A stretch of DNA of 64,000 nucleotides, from NCBI GenBank assembly GCA_904063045.1, contig CAJFCJ010000010.1:806001-870000 (forward strand), in the 5' to 3' direction. The translations under genes and the position numbers were made by a program. Origin of the DNA: Dimorphilus gyrociliatus (taxonomy: Eukaryota > Animalia > Annelida). The notes under the pieces are model-generated. The model searched no databases and was not told the DNA's origin. It was given only the letters and a program-made list of their open reading frames with translations. Shown piece after piece: positions 37,891 through 44,400 of this stretch; position 1 is the stretch's first letter, and each line of letters begins with the position of its first letter.

Positions 37891-38051
37891 TAAATCTAGA
37901 TAAATAATGTTCTAGTTTACACAGGAATAGATTTTATCATTTTTTGTATTTCTGCCAATTTATCTAATTGTACGTGTATTTGAATTAAAATAAAACTATT
38001 ATATGATAATTTGTTGGGTTTTAAAACTTCAAACAACACAGACAAGACAAA

Positions 38052-39862
38052 TTAAATGTTGGAATAATAATTAATTTCCCACTGGGTAATTTGGGACATA
38101 AACGAGTCCCATTCTTTTCTTTTCATATGAAGAAAGCCATCAATTATTCCTTGACCAAGAGATTCCCTTAGAAATTCATTAGACTCCAATTTATTTAATG
38201 CTGCGTCAAGGCTCATGGGAACTTTTTTAAATTGCCCAGAATAGTTTTGAACATCGAAATCTACTCTAGGTCCTGGATCTGAAGAGAAAATTACGACTTT
38301 AACTTTATTATAAGAACTGCAAATTAATCTTTCAAGCAATATAAAATAATAACGAAATATTTTTCTTTACCCGTTTTATTTTTTATTCCATCAAGACCAG
38401 TTGATAATATTGCAGCATGCATCAAATACGGATTTGCTGCTGCATCCGGTAATCTAAGTTCTATCCTGAAATAGATAATAGTAAAAGCGTACTATTTTCA
38501 ATGTCATAATAAATATGAAATGCAATAGGAAATAGAAATACCTATCAGAAACTGGTACTCTAATGAGAACACTTCTATTATTACCACCCCAAGATATTTT
38601 GTTTGGACACCACACGCCTCTATTAAGCCTCTTATAACTATTTACTGTTGAACAGTAAAGAGCACAAGCCGATTCAATGTTGTTTAGTAAACCTCCTATG
38701 AAATTATAGCCTAACGACGATAAACCGATTTCATCTGTGTCGTCTTCAAACAGGTTCTTTGTTGAGTTAGAATTCCAGAGCGAAATGTTAGTGTGCAAAC
38801 CATTAGCTAAAACAAAAAAATTCGTATAAACTGCTATATTAGACTTAAAAAAAACTCAACTATAAATTTACAATAGTATAAATAAACTAACCACAAAGTA
38901 CTTCTGGTAAAGGTACCGCCATAAAAGACGCCTTAACGCCGTGTATTTCGGCTAATTGCTTTATCATAAATTTCATAAACATTTGTCTATCTGACATCTT
39001 CAAGCAGTCAACATAATCGAAATTAATTTCATATTGACAACACGAAGATTCGTGATCAATTTCGTACGGATTCCAACCAATTTTTTCCATACAATCTGCT
39101 AATTCGCAGAGGAAATTTGAATGTCTTAGCGTTGAATGAGGATCTTGAAGACTCATAGGTTGCTGCATATCACATTCGTCATATAATCTCTTACCATCCT
39201 TAGTTAATAGCATAAATTCCGCTTAAACAGTAAAGAAAAACCAGTCAGATAGATAGCTAGAGAGAGAGAGAGAGAGAGAGAAAGATAATGAAAGAGACAG
39301 AGACAGGGAGAGAGAGAGAAGAAAAAATTACGAATATTAACTCAATGCGAAAACAAATTTGAATAGAGAGAAATTAATAATATATTCAGTAATTCCTTAC
39401 GTTCAATACCAGATTTCATAAAATAACCCATCGATTGGGCATCTTGTATTTGTCTTTTTAAACAATCTCTGGGGCATTGTTCGTATGGTTTATTATACAT
39501 GTATAAATCACTATAGGGTTAAAAAAGAGACAATTTACATAGATATCTGAATATCTCCATTATTATTTTGAAAAATAAACACAAAACTATTAATTCATTA
39601 ACCTGCTTAACCATCCAAAATTAGGTTTCCAAGGCAACTGAATTAACGTCGAAGGGTCAGGTTTAATTACCATTTCCGGTTCGGCAGGAGAAGATTTGAA
39701 GAACATGGCTGCAGGCATCCCACACCCTTTATCTTGAACCATTTTAATTGCTTTTTTAGGTATTAGAGAACATCTGGAATCCGCATTTAGTGGTGAATAA
39801 GAAACCAGAAAGTAGTCTATTCCTAATTTTTTTGCAGTTTCTTCTAAATCAATCGAAGACAT
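38052..39862 (-). CDS. Glutamine-synthetase-fold ligase most similar to bacterial GlnT (type III glutamate-ammonia ligase) / GmaS gamma-glutamylmethylamide synthetase; 428 aa, six exons
   Basis: Exons 39862-39603, 39510-39401, 39221-38892, 38806-38542, 38465-38371 and 38278-38052, with GT-AG introns of 92, 179, 85, 76 and 92 nt; total CDS 1287 nt. GS motifs: GIEPEF, DHE...[34 protein letters not shown]. GlnT-like signatures: [34 protein letters not shown] and C-terminal EW..F...IT.WE. Confidence 0.92.
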
Positions 39863-40499
39863 GATTTCTGTCTCCAACTGCAATTGGAAAGCAGGAAATT
39901 TATCAGTCCGGTATCCCGTCCCTCTCTTTTATACTTTAGGTAACCATAATTTACAATAGAATGACATACCATATTAGATCAATATACTACGCCAGATTGA
40001 TGTTTGTCAAAAACAAGTTGGTACCTAGATTTATTATGAGCGGCTTTTATCAAATATAGAAGAAAGCACGAAAATTAAAGATTAGACATACATTTGTAGT
40101 CTTAATTCTCATAGTCATTTTAAAGTGGTGACATAGTTTTATTCCTGATACTTAAAGTCTACATTTTTTAACCTTGATAAAACAATTTATTTCACTTCCG
40201 ACTTGCTATAATATTAGTATTCTAGCATTATTGATGCCAACCTAAACACTAGTTTTCAATTATCCTATTTTTTTTTTACCTTATTTCTGCCTATATATTC
40301 AATTATTTTCATTTTGCTATTTATCTTTTTTATTTGAATTACATTTTTCTCTTTTCTCTCTTTCTATCTACATATCTGTGTAACTCTTACTCTTTCCCTC
40401 TCTCTCTCTCTCCAGTTGTTCGAGCTTTATCATTTGTACAATATATGTAAATAGGTCGGGATAAAATATTGCATAATAAAAATTTTCAAGCCATTTATT

Positions 40500-40514: not shown

Positions 40515-41135
40515 TAATTTCATTAAAAAATGACGATCAAATATATTGAACATGTTCTAAGAAGAGCAAAGATTTGAATAGGAAGAAGAGTATTTTTTCT
40601 TTAACATTTCCTCTCATATAGATCTGACAATTGAGAGATATCGTTAACCTTTTTTTGTTCAGTTTTAAAACAATATATAATTCAACTTTCGCTGAATTAG
40701 CGATTTTTATTGTAATGTTTAGTCAATAAAATTTGTAACTACAAAATAAATTATTCTATAGTATCAAGCCTATAAGGAAAATTGAAATTACCTGTGTTAA
40801 ATGAAGGGAAAATGATTTATTGTATATCTATTAAATATACCAAGGAGAAAAATAACTTTCTAATAATTGGTCTTTGATGACTAAATTCTCATTCAAATGA
40901 ATGATTACTGGATGTTTTCCTTATTTATTATTTTATTATCAACTTAATATAGATATAGAATAAAACAATCCTCTTGGTTGGATGGTCTATATTAAATGTC
41001 AGAATAAAAAAAAACAAACTGTCAAATAACATAATCAATCAGACATGGATGCTTGTTTGTTGTATAATTAAGACACAATTGGAATATATATATATACTGT
41101 ATACCGTATACCTTCCATTCAATCACAAGATAAGA

Positions 41136-44100
41136 ATGAGCAAGTCAAACAAATGCCCTTGCCTTAAATATTTCATATTTTTAGCCGGCGCGTTCGCTAT
41201 TGGTTTCCTTATTGCTTGGTTTTCGCGAGGAAGTTTAGTGGAGAATGTTGAGAAAAATCAAACTTTTTATAAAGGATTTCAAGAAAAACTAGTTAATAAT
41301 ATAGTTGAAATGGTAGAGGGTAAATATATTAAAAAATATTTAAGAACATATGCCGGAAAGCCACATCTAGCTGGAACGCCCCAAGATAAAATCAATGCTG
41401 AAACTCTTTACAAATTCTGGAAAGGCTTGGGATATGAGACAAAAATTATTCCTTATAAAGTATTATTATCTTATCCAGTTGGTGATCCGAAAGAATCGAA
41501 TCTAGTAGAATTTGCAAAATCTAATGGACTTTGGCGAAGCGCAATATTTGAGAAGAAACTCGGAAAAGCTATCTATAACTACTCTGAGATGGTTCAACCA
41601 TTTAACGGTTTCTCTGGATCGGGCGATGTTCGTGGAACACTTGTATATGTCAACTATGGAAGAGAAGAAGATTTTCAATATTTAAAAAACAAATTTAATA
41701 TAAACTTTCAGGGTAAAATTGTAATTGCCAAATATGGGAAAATATTTAGAGGAGACAAGGTTAGTACTTGTACATAAACGCCCTCTCCTTGTGTCTCTAT
41801 CTATTTCTTGTTACAAACAAATAGGCTAAAACGGCTCAAAGGTGGAAAGCGGAGGGAATAATACTCTTCACCGCTCCATTAGACTACGCTCCCGAGTCGG
41901 TTGGAAAACCTTTTCCTGAAGGAATTCTAATGCCATCTAGTGGAGTTCAAAGAGGTTCACTACTTCTCGGGGGAGATCAATTAACACCCGACTTCGCAGC
42001 AACAAGTAATATAAATATACAATAAATAATTAAGCATCGAAACAAATACCAATAGAGACAGCAGAATAAAAATTATATAGCTCGCTTTTAGTAAAACAAA
42101 AGAAAATGTAAACCCTAAAGATTAAATTTATCCATACAGAAAGTAGAATAACAGTTTATTCTACGTGTTTCCATTTTTGTCTATTGTTTTAAGTTTATAT
42201 TCAAAGGGGGAGTTAGGACTATTTGAAATTGTCTAATATTTCAATTAATTGATAGAGTATGCTGCAATTTAATATTCTTTTCGAAGAAAGAAAAAACTAA
42301 ATGCTAATTTTTTATGCCATTCGTTTACAAAGAAAATGTATATATCTATCTATCTATACATCTATATATCTGTATACAATATATTTATATACTATTACTG
42401 TTATTATTATTTAAATAACATATATTTAAATATTGAATTTATTACAAATTAATTCGTTGCTCTTTTTGTTTTACAGACAATACATATTCATACAGAATAT
42501 CAGAGGCTGAAATATCAGACTCGATAAAAATTCCTGTCATTCCGATTAGCTATGAGGATGCTCAATCTCTATTAGAGTATACTTTCTAAATTAGATAAAT
42601 GTCAATAGCAGTTCAACTAAAATATAATTCACTCAGGCATGAAACAATAGACGATGCTACCATTAAAGAGAAATTACCTTCCGATTGGAAACATGGGCTA
42701 AAATTGAAAAAAATAGATACATCTATATACTTTACTTATGACAATTCATTTAACTTGCAAAGGTATCGCAAACTATAGTTCTTTGAATTAAATAATTAGT
42801 ATATAAGGAAAAAATTTTAGAACTGTAAGAGTCAATGTGAACGTATCGAAAGAATTACGAACTACTTATAACGTTCATGCTACGATCAAGGGCACGACGG
42901 AAGAGGGTATATATCATTCATGTTATAACAATAGCATAATAAAGGGTTTCATTATCTGCAGACAGATACGTGATTGTGGGTAATCATAGAGATGCATGGA
43001 CTCATGGATCTATTGACCCATCCAGCGGGACCGCCACAATGCTTGAAATATCTAGAGTTATCTCAAAAGTCCACCGAGAGAGAGGATGGCGACCTAGACG
43101 AAGTATTATATTTTGTAGCTGGGCTGCCGAAGAACAAGGTTTAATAGGTTCAACCGAATGGGTAGAACAATACGGACATATTTTATCAAATAGAGCAATA
43201 GCTTATATAAATACGGATATAGCAGTTCAAGGAACAGATACTTTCCGAGGTAGAGTTTCTTCCTCACTTATCGAAACAGTTCTGCTAGAAGCGACAAAAG
43301 CTGTTAAAAATCCAAACAAACAAGAGATTAAAGATGGCCGTAATACCGTTTTCGATACGTGGAAAAAGTACTACCCATGTAAACAAAATCCCGAAAAGCC
43401 ATAGTTTGTATTACTTGATTACGAGTAACTTTTGACAGAGATTTTTTATTTTTACATCCTTTAATAGCTTAATTCCTCTTGGTTCTGGTAGTGATTTTGA
43501 ACCTTTTGTAACTAGGCTTGGAGTTACTTCTGTTGACCTGCGCTATTCATTTGATCCGGTATAATCTGGCAATCAGTTAACTAAATTCTAATTTTAAATA
43601 CTTATATTCCTTTTTAGCGTAAACCCTTATCTTCCTATCCACTGTATCATACTATGTATGAAACTATCGAATTAGTTGAAAAATACTACGATCCAGATTA
43701 TAGCTATCACGCGTCTATTAGTAAAATAATGCTCTACATGGCTTTACGATTAGTCGATTCAGATATTCTTCCCTTCGAGCCGATTTTATTCTCAGAGCAG
43801 CTTGGAAATAGCATAAAATCTTTTTCTAAAAAGGCTATGAATGTTGCAAGTGATGTAGCTAAAATGCCTAATAAAGTCAAGGACTCTCTAGGTGCAGATA
43901 GAGATTTAAATCCGATTGATGTACAAGACAATAGCTATTGAATAATCGTATTATTACCCTACAGATGATTTACTTAGAGCTGCAGATGAACTAAAAAAAA
44001 GATCAAAGAGCTTTGATTCTGTGCTAAAATCTGTCGATAAAACTAGGTAAGTAAGTTATTGAAGATCATTAAAGAAAGGCTACACGTGTTCTTTTCAACC

Positions 44101-44400
44101 CTTTTTTTTAGACACTTGAACGTCAGATCGATTAATGACCGCCTAATGGAGATTGAGCGTCACTTTATTCACCCACAAGGGTTGCCTAATAGACCTCGCA
44201 TGAGGAACTTGCTTCTCTCTCCAAGTGTCTATAACAGTTATTCAGCAACTCCTCTACCGGGATTGTACGATACTCTTTTTGAAATTGAAAAAAAACAGAA
44301 AACTAGTTGGAAGAAAGTTCATAAGCAAATTAGCTTATTGTCAAACGCCGTTAGGGAGGCGGCAGCCTCGTTAGAATGTACTAGTAATTTTATGATATAG
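41136..44400 (+). CDS. Type II membrane M28B metallopeptidase of the glutamate carboxypeptidase II / NAALADase family, 764 aa, ten exons
   Basis: Exons 41136-41759, 41825-42005, 42477-42576, 42637-42762, 42821-42906, 42962-43403, 43468-43558, 43618-43891, 43965-44046 and 44112-44400 are all GT-AG and phase-compatible (2295 nt). The N-terminal TM anchor, PA domain (GDVRGTLVYVNYGREEDF, KYGKIFRGDK), zinc ligands (GNHRDAW, IDP, WAAEE, INTD, YPLYHT) and TfR-like dimerisation domain (INDRLMEIERHF) are all present. Confidence 0.95.

What the first reader, a model, noticed from the sequence alone, without database searches (positions are those of the whole stretch)
38052..39862. Intron-containing bacterial-type GlnT/GmaS ligase in an animal genome: candidate domesticated horizontal transfer
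Seen: a 428-aa GS-fold ORF split by five canonical spliceosomal introns of host-typical size, embedded among animal genes (GPCRs, FBXL7, BTB-BACK), so it is not a bacterial contaminant. Established: animal glutamine synthetase is GSII, and animal GSI-like genes (lengsin/FluG-like) look different. This protein instead carries the signatures of proteobacterial GlnT/GmaS ([18 protein letters not shown]...P.EQ.PR; GW.PY..DHE; W.PN.I.W.GNNR; C-terminal EW..Y/F...T.WE). GmaS makes gamma-glutamylmethylamide in the methylamine pathway of marine and methylotrophic bacteria. Inference: a bacterial gene was acquired and gained introns, possibly giving the animal a route to handle methylamine or other amines.
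Basis: partly seen in the sequence, partly recalled or inferred. Interest (0 to 1): 0.85.

Follow-up and report, generated by a model that had tools for sequence, protein, structure and literature searches.

The report
Ancient bacterial-type glutamate-amine ligase gene in annelids
This worm gene is real, spliced and expressed, and encodes a bacterial-type (GlnT/GmaS-like) glutamate-amine joining enzyme; all annelids checked share it with the same introns, so it is an old annelid gene, probably of bacterial origin, with a changed amine pocket and an unknown substrate.

Summary
On the minus strand at 38052-39862 lies a six-exon, five-intron (all GT-AG) gene for a 428-aa protein with the glutamine synthetase (GS) fold. 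One 1439-nt contig of a public run matches it perfectly and skips exactly those five introns.

The genome is the annelid Dimorphilus gyrociliatus. The public model DgyrCDS8096 equals residues 91-428 and lacks exon 1.

The best family for every exon is TIGR03105 (GlnT/GmaS), but the score is below its cutoff. The best solved structure is Rhodovulum GmaS.

It is not a recent transfer. Owenia, Capitella and Helobdella carry orthologues with all five Dimorphilus introns at the same codon and phase, plus three that Dimorphilus lost. The gene was therefore already intron-rich in the annelid ancestor.

Outside annelids the nearest relatives are bacterial GmaS/GlnT at 42-47% identity. The trees do not nest annelids inside any bacterial subgroup, so ancient transfer is likely (about 0.6) but unproven.

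Metal, ATP, glutamate and catalytic residues are kept. Three of seven methylamine-pocket residues that never vary in 36 bacterial representatives are replaced, and the flap loop is six residues shorter, so methylamine is an unlikely substrate.

The Riftia genome paper (PMC8789280) already noted prokaryote-like group I GS genes in annelids. The scan's other notes on this gene are on this same stretch, not on other DNA.

The parts
37959..39921 (-). extent of the spliced transcript seen in a public run (5' UTR at least 59 nt, 3' UTR at least 93 nt)
   Evidence: One 1439-nt contig of run X1 with 0 mismatches, laid in six pieces.
39603..39862 (-). exon 1 CDS (aa 1-87, N-terminal beta-grasp domain); missing from the public model DgyrCDS8096
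   Evidence: TIGR03105 positions 2-82, 47.5 bits. Matches 7cql residues 22-104, E 1.3e-15. Joined to exon 2 in the X1 contig. In-frame stop upstream.
39511..39602 (-). intron 1, 92 nt, GT-AG, phase 2 at codon 87
   Evidence: Same position and phase in Helobdella and Owenia.
39401..39510 (-). exon 2 (aa 87-124; ends in the metal-binding E-x-E motif)
39222..39400 (-). intron 2, 179 nt, GT-AG, phase 1 at codon 124; holds a (GA)n microsatellite
   Evidence: Shared with Helobdella, Capitella and Owenia.
38892..39221 (-). exon 3 (aa 124-234): amine pocket and catalytic Asp and Glu (RhGmaS D177, E179, E186)
   Evidence: TIGR03105 89 bits against GlnA 40 bits. 7cql E 2.3e-21. Residue map. In other annelids this exon is split by two more introns.
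38807..38891 (-). intron 3, 85 nt, GT-AG, phase 1 at codon 234
38542..38806 (-). exon 4 (aa 234-322): H235, S239, K287, R288, shortened flap loop with Trp, R312, R317
   Evidence: Pfam Gln-synt_C 101 bits. Alignment to 7cql shows the 6-residue gap..
38466..38541 (-). intron 4, 76 nt, GT-AG, phase 2 at codon 322
38371..38465 (-). exon 5 (aa 322-354): E325 and R327
38279..38370 (-). intron 5, 92 nt, GT-AG, phase 1 at codon 354
38052..38278 (-). exon 6 CDS (aa 354-428 plus stop at 38052-38054)

Best explanation
This is a genuine, expressed nuclear gene of the annelid Dimorphilus gyrociliatus. It encodes a cytosolic, two-domain enzyme with the glutamine synthetase (GS) fold, from the GlnT/GmaS (TIGR03105-like) lineage.

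Shown: the gene structure, the spliced transcript, the family assignment, and orthologues in Owenia, Capitella and Helobdella with eight shared intron positions. The gene was therefore already intron-rich in the last common annelid ancestor, and Dimorphilus later lost three introns.

Inferred origin: one ancient transfer of a bacterial GmaS/GlnT-type gene into the annelid stem lineage (or earlier), followed by intron gain, a six-residue deletion in the flap loop and fast divergence.

Inferred mechanism: like GmaS, the enzyme should phosphorylate the gamma-carboxyl of glutamate with ATP on Mg/Mn sites. It should then let an amine attack the acyl phosphate, with Asp177 deprotonating the amine and Glu186 resolving the tetrahedral intermediate (RhGmaS numbering). 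All of these residues are kept.

The amine pocket is rebuilt: K30' to Ser, Y147 to Gln, Q175 to Glu. The enzyme also lacks both ammonia-handling residues of true GS. The substrate is therefore most likely an amine other than methylamine or ammonia, such as a biogenic monoamine or a polyamine, giving a gamma-glutamyl amide.
For: Gene and transcript.

Family: TIGR03105 is the best NCBIfam on every exon, colinear over positions 2-434 of 435. On whole proteins it beats GlnA by more than 100 bits. RhGmaS 7cql is the top solved structure by sequence. It is also the top fold match for the orthologue P0425: pLDDT 91, TM 0.89/0.95, rmsd 1.4-1.9 A.

Age: all five Dimorphilus introns are shared in codon and phase with Helobdella and Owenia, and the four that the truncated Capitella model covers with Capitella. 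Three more (178/0, 212/0, 293/2) are present in all three but absent here. All eight annelid sequences share a 6-residue loop deletion and a W-C-P motif. The crown clade has 100/100 support, and adding Owenia gives 80/69 and 88. Against a close relative dN is 0.19 while dS is saturated, with the reading frame intact.

Bacterial affinity: the catalytic domain is 45-47% identical to marine bacterial GlnT/GmaS, and Owenia is 45-47% identical. GTDB genomes reach at most 47%. A roseobacter relative sits in an mgsABC-gmaS cluster. The only animals among the listed hits are annelids.

The liverwort member has 12 introns, none shared with annelids, and keeps the loop insertion.

Residue map: with residue roles taken from PMC7948447.

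Against: No enzymatic data exist.

The annelid clade is not nested in any bacterial subclade. It sits on a long branch at the unresolved base. An all-eukaryote clade is not rejected (AU p 0.28).

The Riftia paper reports that sponge sequences cluster here too, and reads the pattern as secondary loss.

No lengsin, FluG or sponge sequence could be fetched for a direct test.

Scores are below the TIGR03105 equivalog cutoff.

H237 to Asn and W189 to Phe touch the ATP site.

The run with the spliced contig is not on record as RNA.

Molluscs also hold gamma-glutamyl serotonin, and no mollusc homologue turned up in my searches, so this gene cannot be the general invertebrate enzyme.
Confidence: 0.7

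Rival explanations
1. Vertical descent. The gene survives from an ancient eukaryotic or early-metazoan GS-like gene of the GlnT type, and was lost in nearly all other animals. This is the 'secondary loss' reading of the Riftia genome paper.
For: Annelids branch outside the main bacterial GlnT/GmaS clade (86/86). The AU test does not reject one clade of all eukaryotic members (p 0.28). Sponge sequences are reported in the same cluster. The gene had at least 8 introns in the annelid ancestor. Annelids lack the loop insertion, as GlnA and PuuA do.
Against: No non-annelid animal appeared in three database searches that listed everything scoring above about 310 bits. The other eukaryotic members (liverwort, Paulinella, diplonemid) sit inside the bacterial clade, keep the insertion, and share no intron with annelids where tested. 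Identity of 45-47% to bacteria is high for a split at the root of eukaryotes. Sponge hits may come from symbionts: a sponge-associated Rhodobacter carries a homologue (L069).
Confidence: 0.25
2. One reading: the enzyme is a true gamma-glutamylmethylamide synthetase that lets the worm take up or detoxify methylamine.
For: The closest characterised enzymes are GmaS. The catalytic Asp177, Glu186 and Arg312, and the Trp in place of the flap Glu, are kept.
Against: K30', Y147 and Q175 of the methylamine pocket are present in 36 of 36 bacterial representatives but are replaced here. The flap loop is 6 residues shorter. Scores are below the equivalog cutoff. Bacterial GmaS works with mgsABC next to it, and no such partner is known in animals (my own knowledge; not searched in this genome).
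Confidence: 0.1
3. A non-catalytic GS-like protein, recruited for a structural or regulatory role as lengsin was in the vertebrate lens.
For: Some family members have lost key residues. P0004 has D177F, R312K and R317C, and Owenia has D177V and H178A. There is precedent in lengsin (Wyatt 2006, as cited).
Against: In Dimorphilus, and in Helobdella, P0425 and P0426 over the full length and Capitella and P0169 over the positions they cover, all six metal ligands, R288, R312, R317, R327, D177 and E186 are intact after more than 500 My (the age is my own knowledge). dN is 0.19 with dS saturated.
Confidence: 0.08
4. Bacterial contamination or a recent Dimorphilus-specific insertion.
For: None beyond the bacterial-type sequence.
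Against: Five spliceosomal introns removed in a transcript contig. Host-like composition. Animal genes on both sides. A 1.76-Mb contig in NCBI. Orthologues with the same introns in three other annelid genomes.
Confidence: 0.01

Closest known systems
Bacterial gamma-glutamylmethylamide synthetase GmaS (Rhodovulum sp. 12E13, PDB 7CQL and related entries; Methylovorus mays 9QUR) and rhizobial GlnT, NCBIfam TIGR03105
   Same: Same two-domain fold (TM 0.89/0.95 for the orthologue) and colinear over the whole length. Same metal ligands, ATP and glutamate arginines, catalytic Asp177, Glu186 and Arg312, Trp at the flap-Glu position, and no Asp50' (PMC7948447).
   Different: Below the equivalog cutoff: 355 bits for aa 91-428, and 379-462 bits for orthologues, against 469.6. 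Pocket residues K30', Y147 and Q175 are replaced, as are D180, N182, G183, W189 and H237. The flap loop is 6 residues shorter. The gene is nuclear with introns, and has no mgsABC neighbours.
Annelid 'prokaryote-like group I glutamine synthetase' genes reported in the Riftia pachyptila genome paper (de Oliveira et al. 2022, PMC8789280, supplementary note and Fig. S43)
   Same: Their annelid glnA (K01915) gene lists hold CapteP219713 and Helro1_190105, which are the Capitella and Helobdella orthologues found here. They note annelid genes clustering with prokaryotic GSI, apart from lengsins.
   Different: They did not name the subfamily (GlnT/GmaS), the introns, the active-site changes or Dimorphilus. 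They read the pattern as secondary loss rather than transfer. I could not see their tree, so I infer that these two genes are the ones in that cluster.
Lengsin and other eukaryotic GSI-like genes (FluG and others)
   Same: GS-fold proteins of group I type in animals.
   Different: A published tree places annelid lengsins in a separate clade.
GS-like gamma-glutamyl-amine ligases with other amines: E. coli PuuA (putrescine) and Pseudomonas NpaA1 (1-naphthylamine GS, PDB 8WWU)
   Same: Same chemistry with a larger amine. These show that GS-fold pockets retune to polyamines or arylamines. Owenia has the PuuA-like Val-Ala at positions 177-178.
   Different: Much lower similarity: PuuA model 208 bits against 355 for TIGR03105, and NpaA1 25-26% identity, TMt 0.75.
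GSI gene of root-knot nematodes listed as a lateral transfer from bacteria (Scholl 2003, table in PMC3511272)
   Same: A precedent for a bacterial GSI-type gene in an animal genome.
   Different: A different animal lineage. Its relationship to this gene was not tested here.

Membership tests
NCBIfam TIGR03105 (type III glutamate-ammonia ligase, GlnT/GmaS equivalog) | Whole-protein score at or above the curated cutoff of 469.6 bits | tested here: not met
   P0170 (aa 91-428) scores 354.7 bits, and exon 1 alone 47.5 bits. The exon-wise sum is about 341 bits. Orthologues score 379-462 bits. A roseobacter GmaS scores 657 bits.
NCBIfam TIGR03105 (type III glutamate-ammonia ligase, GlnT/GmaS equivalog) | Best-scoring family, colinear over the full model | tested here: met
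   The six exons cover model positions 2-434 of 435 in order. On P0170 it beats GlnA by 107 bits.
GmaS (as defined structurally in PMC7948447) | Catalytic Asp177, Glu186 and Arg312; Trp300 instead of the flap Glu; no Asp50' | tested here: met
   D, E, R and W are present, and Pro stands at the Ala48' position.
GmaS (as defined structurally in PMC7948447) | Methylamine pocket: Tyr147, Gln175, Asp177, Glu179, Glu186, Asn188, Lys30' | tested here: not met
   Four of seven are kept. Y147 to Gln, Q175 to Glu and K30' to Ser. All three are present in 36 of 36 bacterial representatives.
GmaS (as defined structurally in PMC7948447) | Full-length flexible loop Lys287-Ile305 | tested here: not met
   The loop is six residues shorter in all eight annelid sequences. 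It is full length in all intact bacterial sequences in the tree set and in the three other eukaryotic members.
GmaS (functional) | Partner genes of the N-methylglutamate pathway (mgsABC, mgdABCD) | not testable with these tools
   These are seen beside the bacterial relative L061. The worm genome beyond this window could not be searched, and the window neighbours are unrelated.
Classical glutamine synthetase GSI (TIGR00653) and GSII | Score above cutoff; Asp50' and flap Glu327 for ammonium handling | tested here: not met
   GlnA scores 247 bits against a cutoff of 429. GlnII scores only 12.7 bits on exon 3. Pro and Trp stand at the two positions.
Lengsin family | Groups with vertebrate and sea-urchin lengsin in a tree | not testable with these tools
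   No lengsin sequence could be fetched. A published tree separates annelid lengsins from the prokaryote-like annelid clade.
Horizontally acquired animal gene | Integrated in host DNA, with spliceosomal introns, and expressed | tested here: met
Horizontally acquired animal gene | Nested with support inside a donor clade | tested here: inconclusive
   Annelids lie at the unresolved base, outside the main bacterial clade. AU p is 0.28 for one eukaryotic clade.
Horizontally acquired animal gene | Absent from sister animal lineages | tested here: inconclusive
   Only annelids are among the listed hits. The literature says annelids plus sponges. No genome-wide survey of animals was possible.

The most novel reading that the evidence does not exclude
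The annelid-wide clade is the unidentified ATP-dependent gamma-glutamyl-amine synthetase that conjugates and inactivates monoamines in annelids. [quoted passage not shown] On this reading the enzyme was born from a bacterial methylamine enzyme by an ancient transfer, with retuning of the amine pocket.
Probability: 0.12. Interest if true: 0.75.

Novelty: new variant of a known kind. Interest (0 to 1): 0.45.

Why it matters
If the transfer reading holds, this is a clean example of a bacterial metabolic enzyme kept by a whole animal phylum for over half a billion years. Its introns give a datable history: eight gained before the annelid radiation, and three lost in the compacted Dimorphilus genome.

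It also gives a concrete, clonable candidate for gamma-glutamyl-amine formation in annelids. I found no paper that names an enzyme for this chemistry in annelids.

Practically, the public gene model lacks the N-terminal domain that completes the neighbouring subunit's active site. It should be corrected before any expression work.

Tried and rejected
- **Naming a donor.** Three trees leave the annelid stem at an unresolved base. The motif-led scan of 185,579 species genomes gave only Alphaproteobacteria-rich hits of at most 47% identity. That set is biased by the two peptide patterns used.
- **Testing one eukaryotic origin.** The AU test was not decisive (p 0.28).
- **Direct comparison with lengsin, FluG or sponge genes.** No tool could hand me such a sequence. 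The three word-index searches list only the top 120 hits, which bacteria fill.
- **Naming the organisms behind twelve further annelid-type fragments and transcripts** (P0001, P0004, P0021, P0026, P0062, P0070, P0082, P0087, P0109, P0121, P0131, P0425). The cluster look-ups carry no names. Two lie on megabase ENA contigs, one of them (L073) beside a GPCR gene, but the species is unknown.
- **RNA evidence.** Only one run holds the stretch. It is kept as contigs and is not on record as RNA, so there are no expression levels, strand or ends.
- **dN/dS.** dS is saturated, so only dN = 0.19 can be given.
- **ESM Atlas.** Only bacterial type III GS clusters came back.
- **Conserved synteny.** The neighbours differ in Helobdella, Capitella and Owenia.
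- **Contamination and recent transfer** were considered and rejected.
Full report
**1. What is there**

The minus strand of 38052-39862 reads as six exons joined by five GT-AG introns of 92, 179, 85, 76 and 92 nt. Together they give a 1287-nt CDS and a 428-aa protein. The introns are 19-32% GC, the CDS 36% and the window 28.7%.

All six exon translations hit the glutamine synthetase domains in colinear order. These are Pfam Gln-synt_N and Gln-synt_C.

A word-index search returned DgyrCDS8096 of Dimorphilus gyrociliatus (P0170, 338 aa, on a 1.76-Mb contig). It is identical to residues 91-428 of my model. This names the genome, which an earlier scan note had suggested. It confirms introns 2-5, and it shows that the public model lacks exon 1, the whole N-terminal beta-grasp domain.

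The only public run that holds the stretch contains one 1439-nt contig. The contig lies on 37959-39921 without a mismatch and skips exactly the five introns, including the exon 1-exon 2 joint. The run is not on record as RNA, so I take it as a cDNA-type contig with that caveat.

An in-frame stop lies 66 nt upstream of the ATG at 39862, with no ATG in between. The N-terminus starts directly in the conserved domain, so no targeting peptide is apparent.

The flanking genes are animal genes: two rhodopsin-type GPCRs, a BTB-BACK gene, an F-box/LRR gene and a glutamate-carboxypeptidase-II-like gene.

**2. What family**

Against NCBIfam, every exon has TIGR03105 (type III glutamate-ammonia ligase, the GlnT/GmaS model) as its best or joint-best hit. 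Together they cover positions 2-434 of 435.

On whole proteins, TIGR03105 beats GlnA by more than 100 bits for the Dimorphilus protein and for all annelid orthologues. None reaches the curated cutoff of 469.6 bits:

| Protein | TIGR03105 score (bits) |
|---|---|
| Dimorphilus, aa 91-428 | 355 |
| Annelid orthologues | 379-462 |
| A roseobacter GmaS | 657 |

By sequence, the best solved structures are Rhodovulum GmaS (7CQL) and Methylovorus GmaS (9QUR).

An AlphaFold model of the full-length orthologue P0425 (57% identical to the window protein) has pLDDT 91. It matches 7CQN, 7CQL and 7CQW best: TM 0.89/0.95, rmsd 1.4-1.9 A, 43-45% identity. Archaeal and Bacillus-type GSI come next.

**3. How old**

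A profile-free search of 1.84 billion representatives with exon 3, followed by word-index searches, found these orthologues:

- Capitella teleta (P0002).
- Helobdella robusta (P0167).
- Owenia fusiformis (P0053).
- Several unnamed transcripts and genomic fragments carrying the same signature motifs.

I rebuilt the exact exon chains of the three annotated genes from their genomic loci and placed the introns on an alignment.

| Intron position (codon/phase) | Dimorphilus | Helobdella | Capitella | Owenia |
|---|---|---|---|---|
| 87/2 | present | present | outside the model | present |
| 124/1 | present | present | present | present |
| 178/0 | absent | present | present | present |
| 212/0 | absent | present | present | present |
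| 234/1 | present | present | present | present |
| 293/2 | absent | present | present | present |
| 322/2 | present | present | present | present |
| 354/1 | present | present | present | present |

A close unnamed relative (L003, 71% aa identity) keeps 293/2 but also lacks 178 and 212.

Owenia belongs to the lineage that is sister to all other annelids (my own knowledge of annelid phylogeny). The gene therefore had at least eight introns in the last common annelid ancestor. Dimorphilus lost three of them, in line with the intron loss described for its compact genome (PMC7854359).

All eight annelid sequences also share a six-residue deletion in the flap loop and a W-C-P motif there. Every intact bacterial sequence in the tree set and the three other eukaryotic members keep the longer loop.

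Trees recover the crown annelid clade at 100/100. Adding Owenia gives 80/69 (careful tree) or 88 (no outgroups). Against L003, dN is 0.19 while dS is saturated.

**4. Where from**

Outside annelids the nearest sequences are bacterial.

- The Dimorphilus catalytic domain is 45-47% identical to marine GlnT/GmaS proteins, for example from Puniceispirillales.
- Owenia is 45-47% identical to cyanobacterial and proteobacterial ones.
- A scan of one genome per prokaryotic species gave mostly Rhodobacterales and other Alphaproteobacteria at 42-47%. The two peptide patterns used bias that set.
- One such relative sits directly after mgsABC-like genes, the N-methylglutamate synthase cluster. The bacterial neighbours are therefore true GmaS.

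The only animals among the listed hits of three searches are annelids.

Other eukaryotes with such genes are a liverwort, Paulinella and a diplonemid. They fall inside the bacterial clade. The liverwort gene has 12 introns, none at an annelid position.

All this fits independent acquisitions of an intronless bacterial gene. The trees, however, do not nest annelids in any bacterial subgroup. The clade sits on a long branch outside the main bacterial clade (86/86) at an unresolved base. An AU test does not reject a single clade of all eukaryotic members (p 0.28). The window protein's composition also departs from the model's assumption.

I put ancient transfer at about 0.6 and vertical descent with massive loss at about 0.25.

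**5. What is already published**

The Riftia genome paper reports that annelids hold two clades of group I GS. One is the lengsins. [quoted passage not shown] The paper reads this as secondary loss elsewhere.

Its annelid glnA (K01915) gene lists hold CapteP219713 and Helro1_190105, which are the two orthologues found here. The presence of prokaryote-like GSI genes in annelids is therefore not new.

The following I did not find in papers:

- the GlnT/GmaS assignment;
- the intron history;
- the corrected Dimorphilus model;
- the active-site changes.

A bacterial GSI gene is also listed among root-knot nematode transfers.

**6. How it probably works**

I mapped the residues that the RhGmaS structures define (PMC7948447) onto an alignment of 36 bacterial representatives and the eukaryotic sequences.

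Kept in Dimorphilus, in Helobdella, P0425 and P0426, and in Capitella and P0169 over the positions they cover:

- the six metal ligands E122, E124, E179, E186, H235 and E325;
- the glutamate and phosphate arginines R288, R312, R317 and R327;
- Y174 and Y191 (Phe in P0425 and P0169);
- the proposed bases D177 and E186.

As in GmaS, and unlike true GS, a Trp stands at the flap-Glu position and there is no Asp50' equivalent. The basic chemistry should therefore hold: ATP-dependent formation of gamma-glutamyl phosphate, then attack by an amine. This is inferred, not shown.

Seven residues line the methylamine site, and all are present in 36 of 36 bacterial sequences. Three of them are replaced:

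- K30' to Ser;
- Y147 to Gln;
- Q175 to Glu.

Nearby, D180, N182, G183, W189 and H237 also change, and the flap is six residues shorter.

Losing a lysine and a tyrosine and gaining a glutamate should make the pocket roomier and more negative. That would suit a larger or more cationic amine. This step is inference.

Candidate substrates:

- Monoamines. [quoted passage not shown] An earlier scan note on this same stretch raised the idea.
- Polyamines. Owenia has the PuuA-like Val-Ala at positions 177-178.
- Ammonia, which is still possible.

Methylamine is the least favoured.

Some family members (P0004, Owenia) have lost D177 or arginines. They may be inactive or work differently.

**7. Verdict**

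The gene is bacterial-type, integrated, intron-bearing and expressed. But it is a pan-annelid gene of great age, and neither its bacterial origin nor its substrate is proven. Its existence in annelids has been noted in print.

Noticed in passing
window 40974-44400 (+): ORFs with Peptidase_M28 (42970-43404) and the transferrin-receptor-like dimerisation domain (44059-44400). This looks like a glutamate carboxypeptidase II / NAALADase-like gene. It lies head-to-head with the ligase gene, about 1 kb from the ligase mRNA 5' end (at or beyond 39921) to its first ORF. A glutamate-releasing peptidase next to a glutamate ligase may be coincidence. The pairing is not seen beside the Helobdella, Capitella or Owenia orthologues.
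   Followed up: partly
window 39603-39862 (-): The public model DgyrCDS8096 starts at the Met in exon 2. It omits exon 1, the N-terminal beta-grasp domain that supplies residues to the neighbouring subunit's active site. The spliced contig shows that exon 1 is part of the mRNA.
   Followed up: yes
window about 39259-39320: A (GA)n microsatellite inside intron 2, which makes this the longest of the five introns. Read laying skipped 39241-39327 as a repeat.
   Followed up: no
L008 (Owenia fusiformis, P0053): The Owenia orthologue is the most bacterial-like (462 bits to TIGR03105, 45-47% identity). It has Val-Ala instead of the catalytic Asp177-His178, the same pair as E. coli PuuA.
   Followed up: partly
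L011 (Calypogeia fissa, P0391): A liverwort carries a full TIGR03105 member (615 bits) on a 41.7-Mb contig. It has 12 introns, none shared with annelids. This looks like a separate acquisition of the same bacterial family by a plant.
   Followed up: partly
P0003 / P0151 (Candidatus Auribacterota MAG): A 4424-aa bacterial protein with six GS-like stretches came up as the third-best hit to exon 3. It is a giant multi-GS-domain protein of unknown role.
   Followed up: no
L073 and L074 (ENA assemblies ERZ25072999, ERZ25767047): Megabase contigs filed as metagenome assemblies carry exon-sized pieces of the annelid-type gene, in L073 beside a 7tm_1 GPCR gene. They are therefore animal, probably annelid, DNA of unnamed species.
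   Followed up: partly
L069 (Candidatus Rhodobacter oscarellae): A sponge-associated bacterium has a GmaS homologue (42% identity to P0425). This is a possible source of the 'poriferan' sequences that a published tree places with the annelid genes.
   Followed up: no
   Followed up: yes
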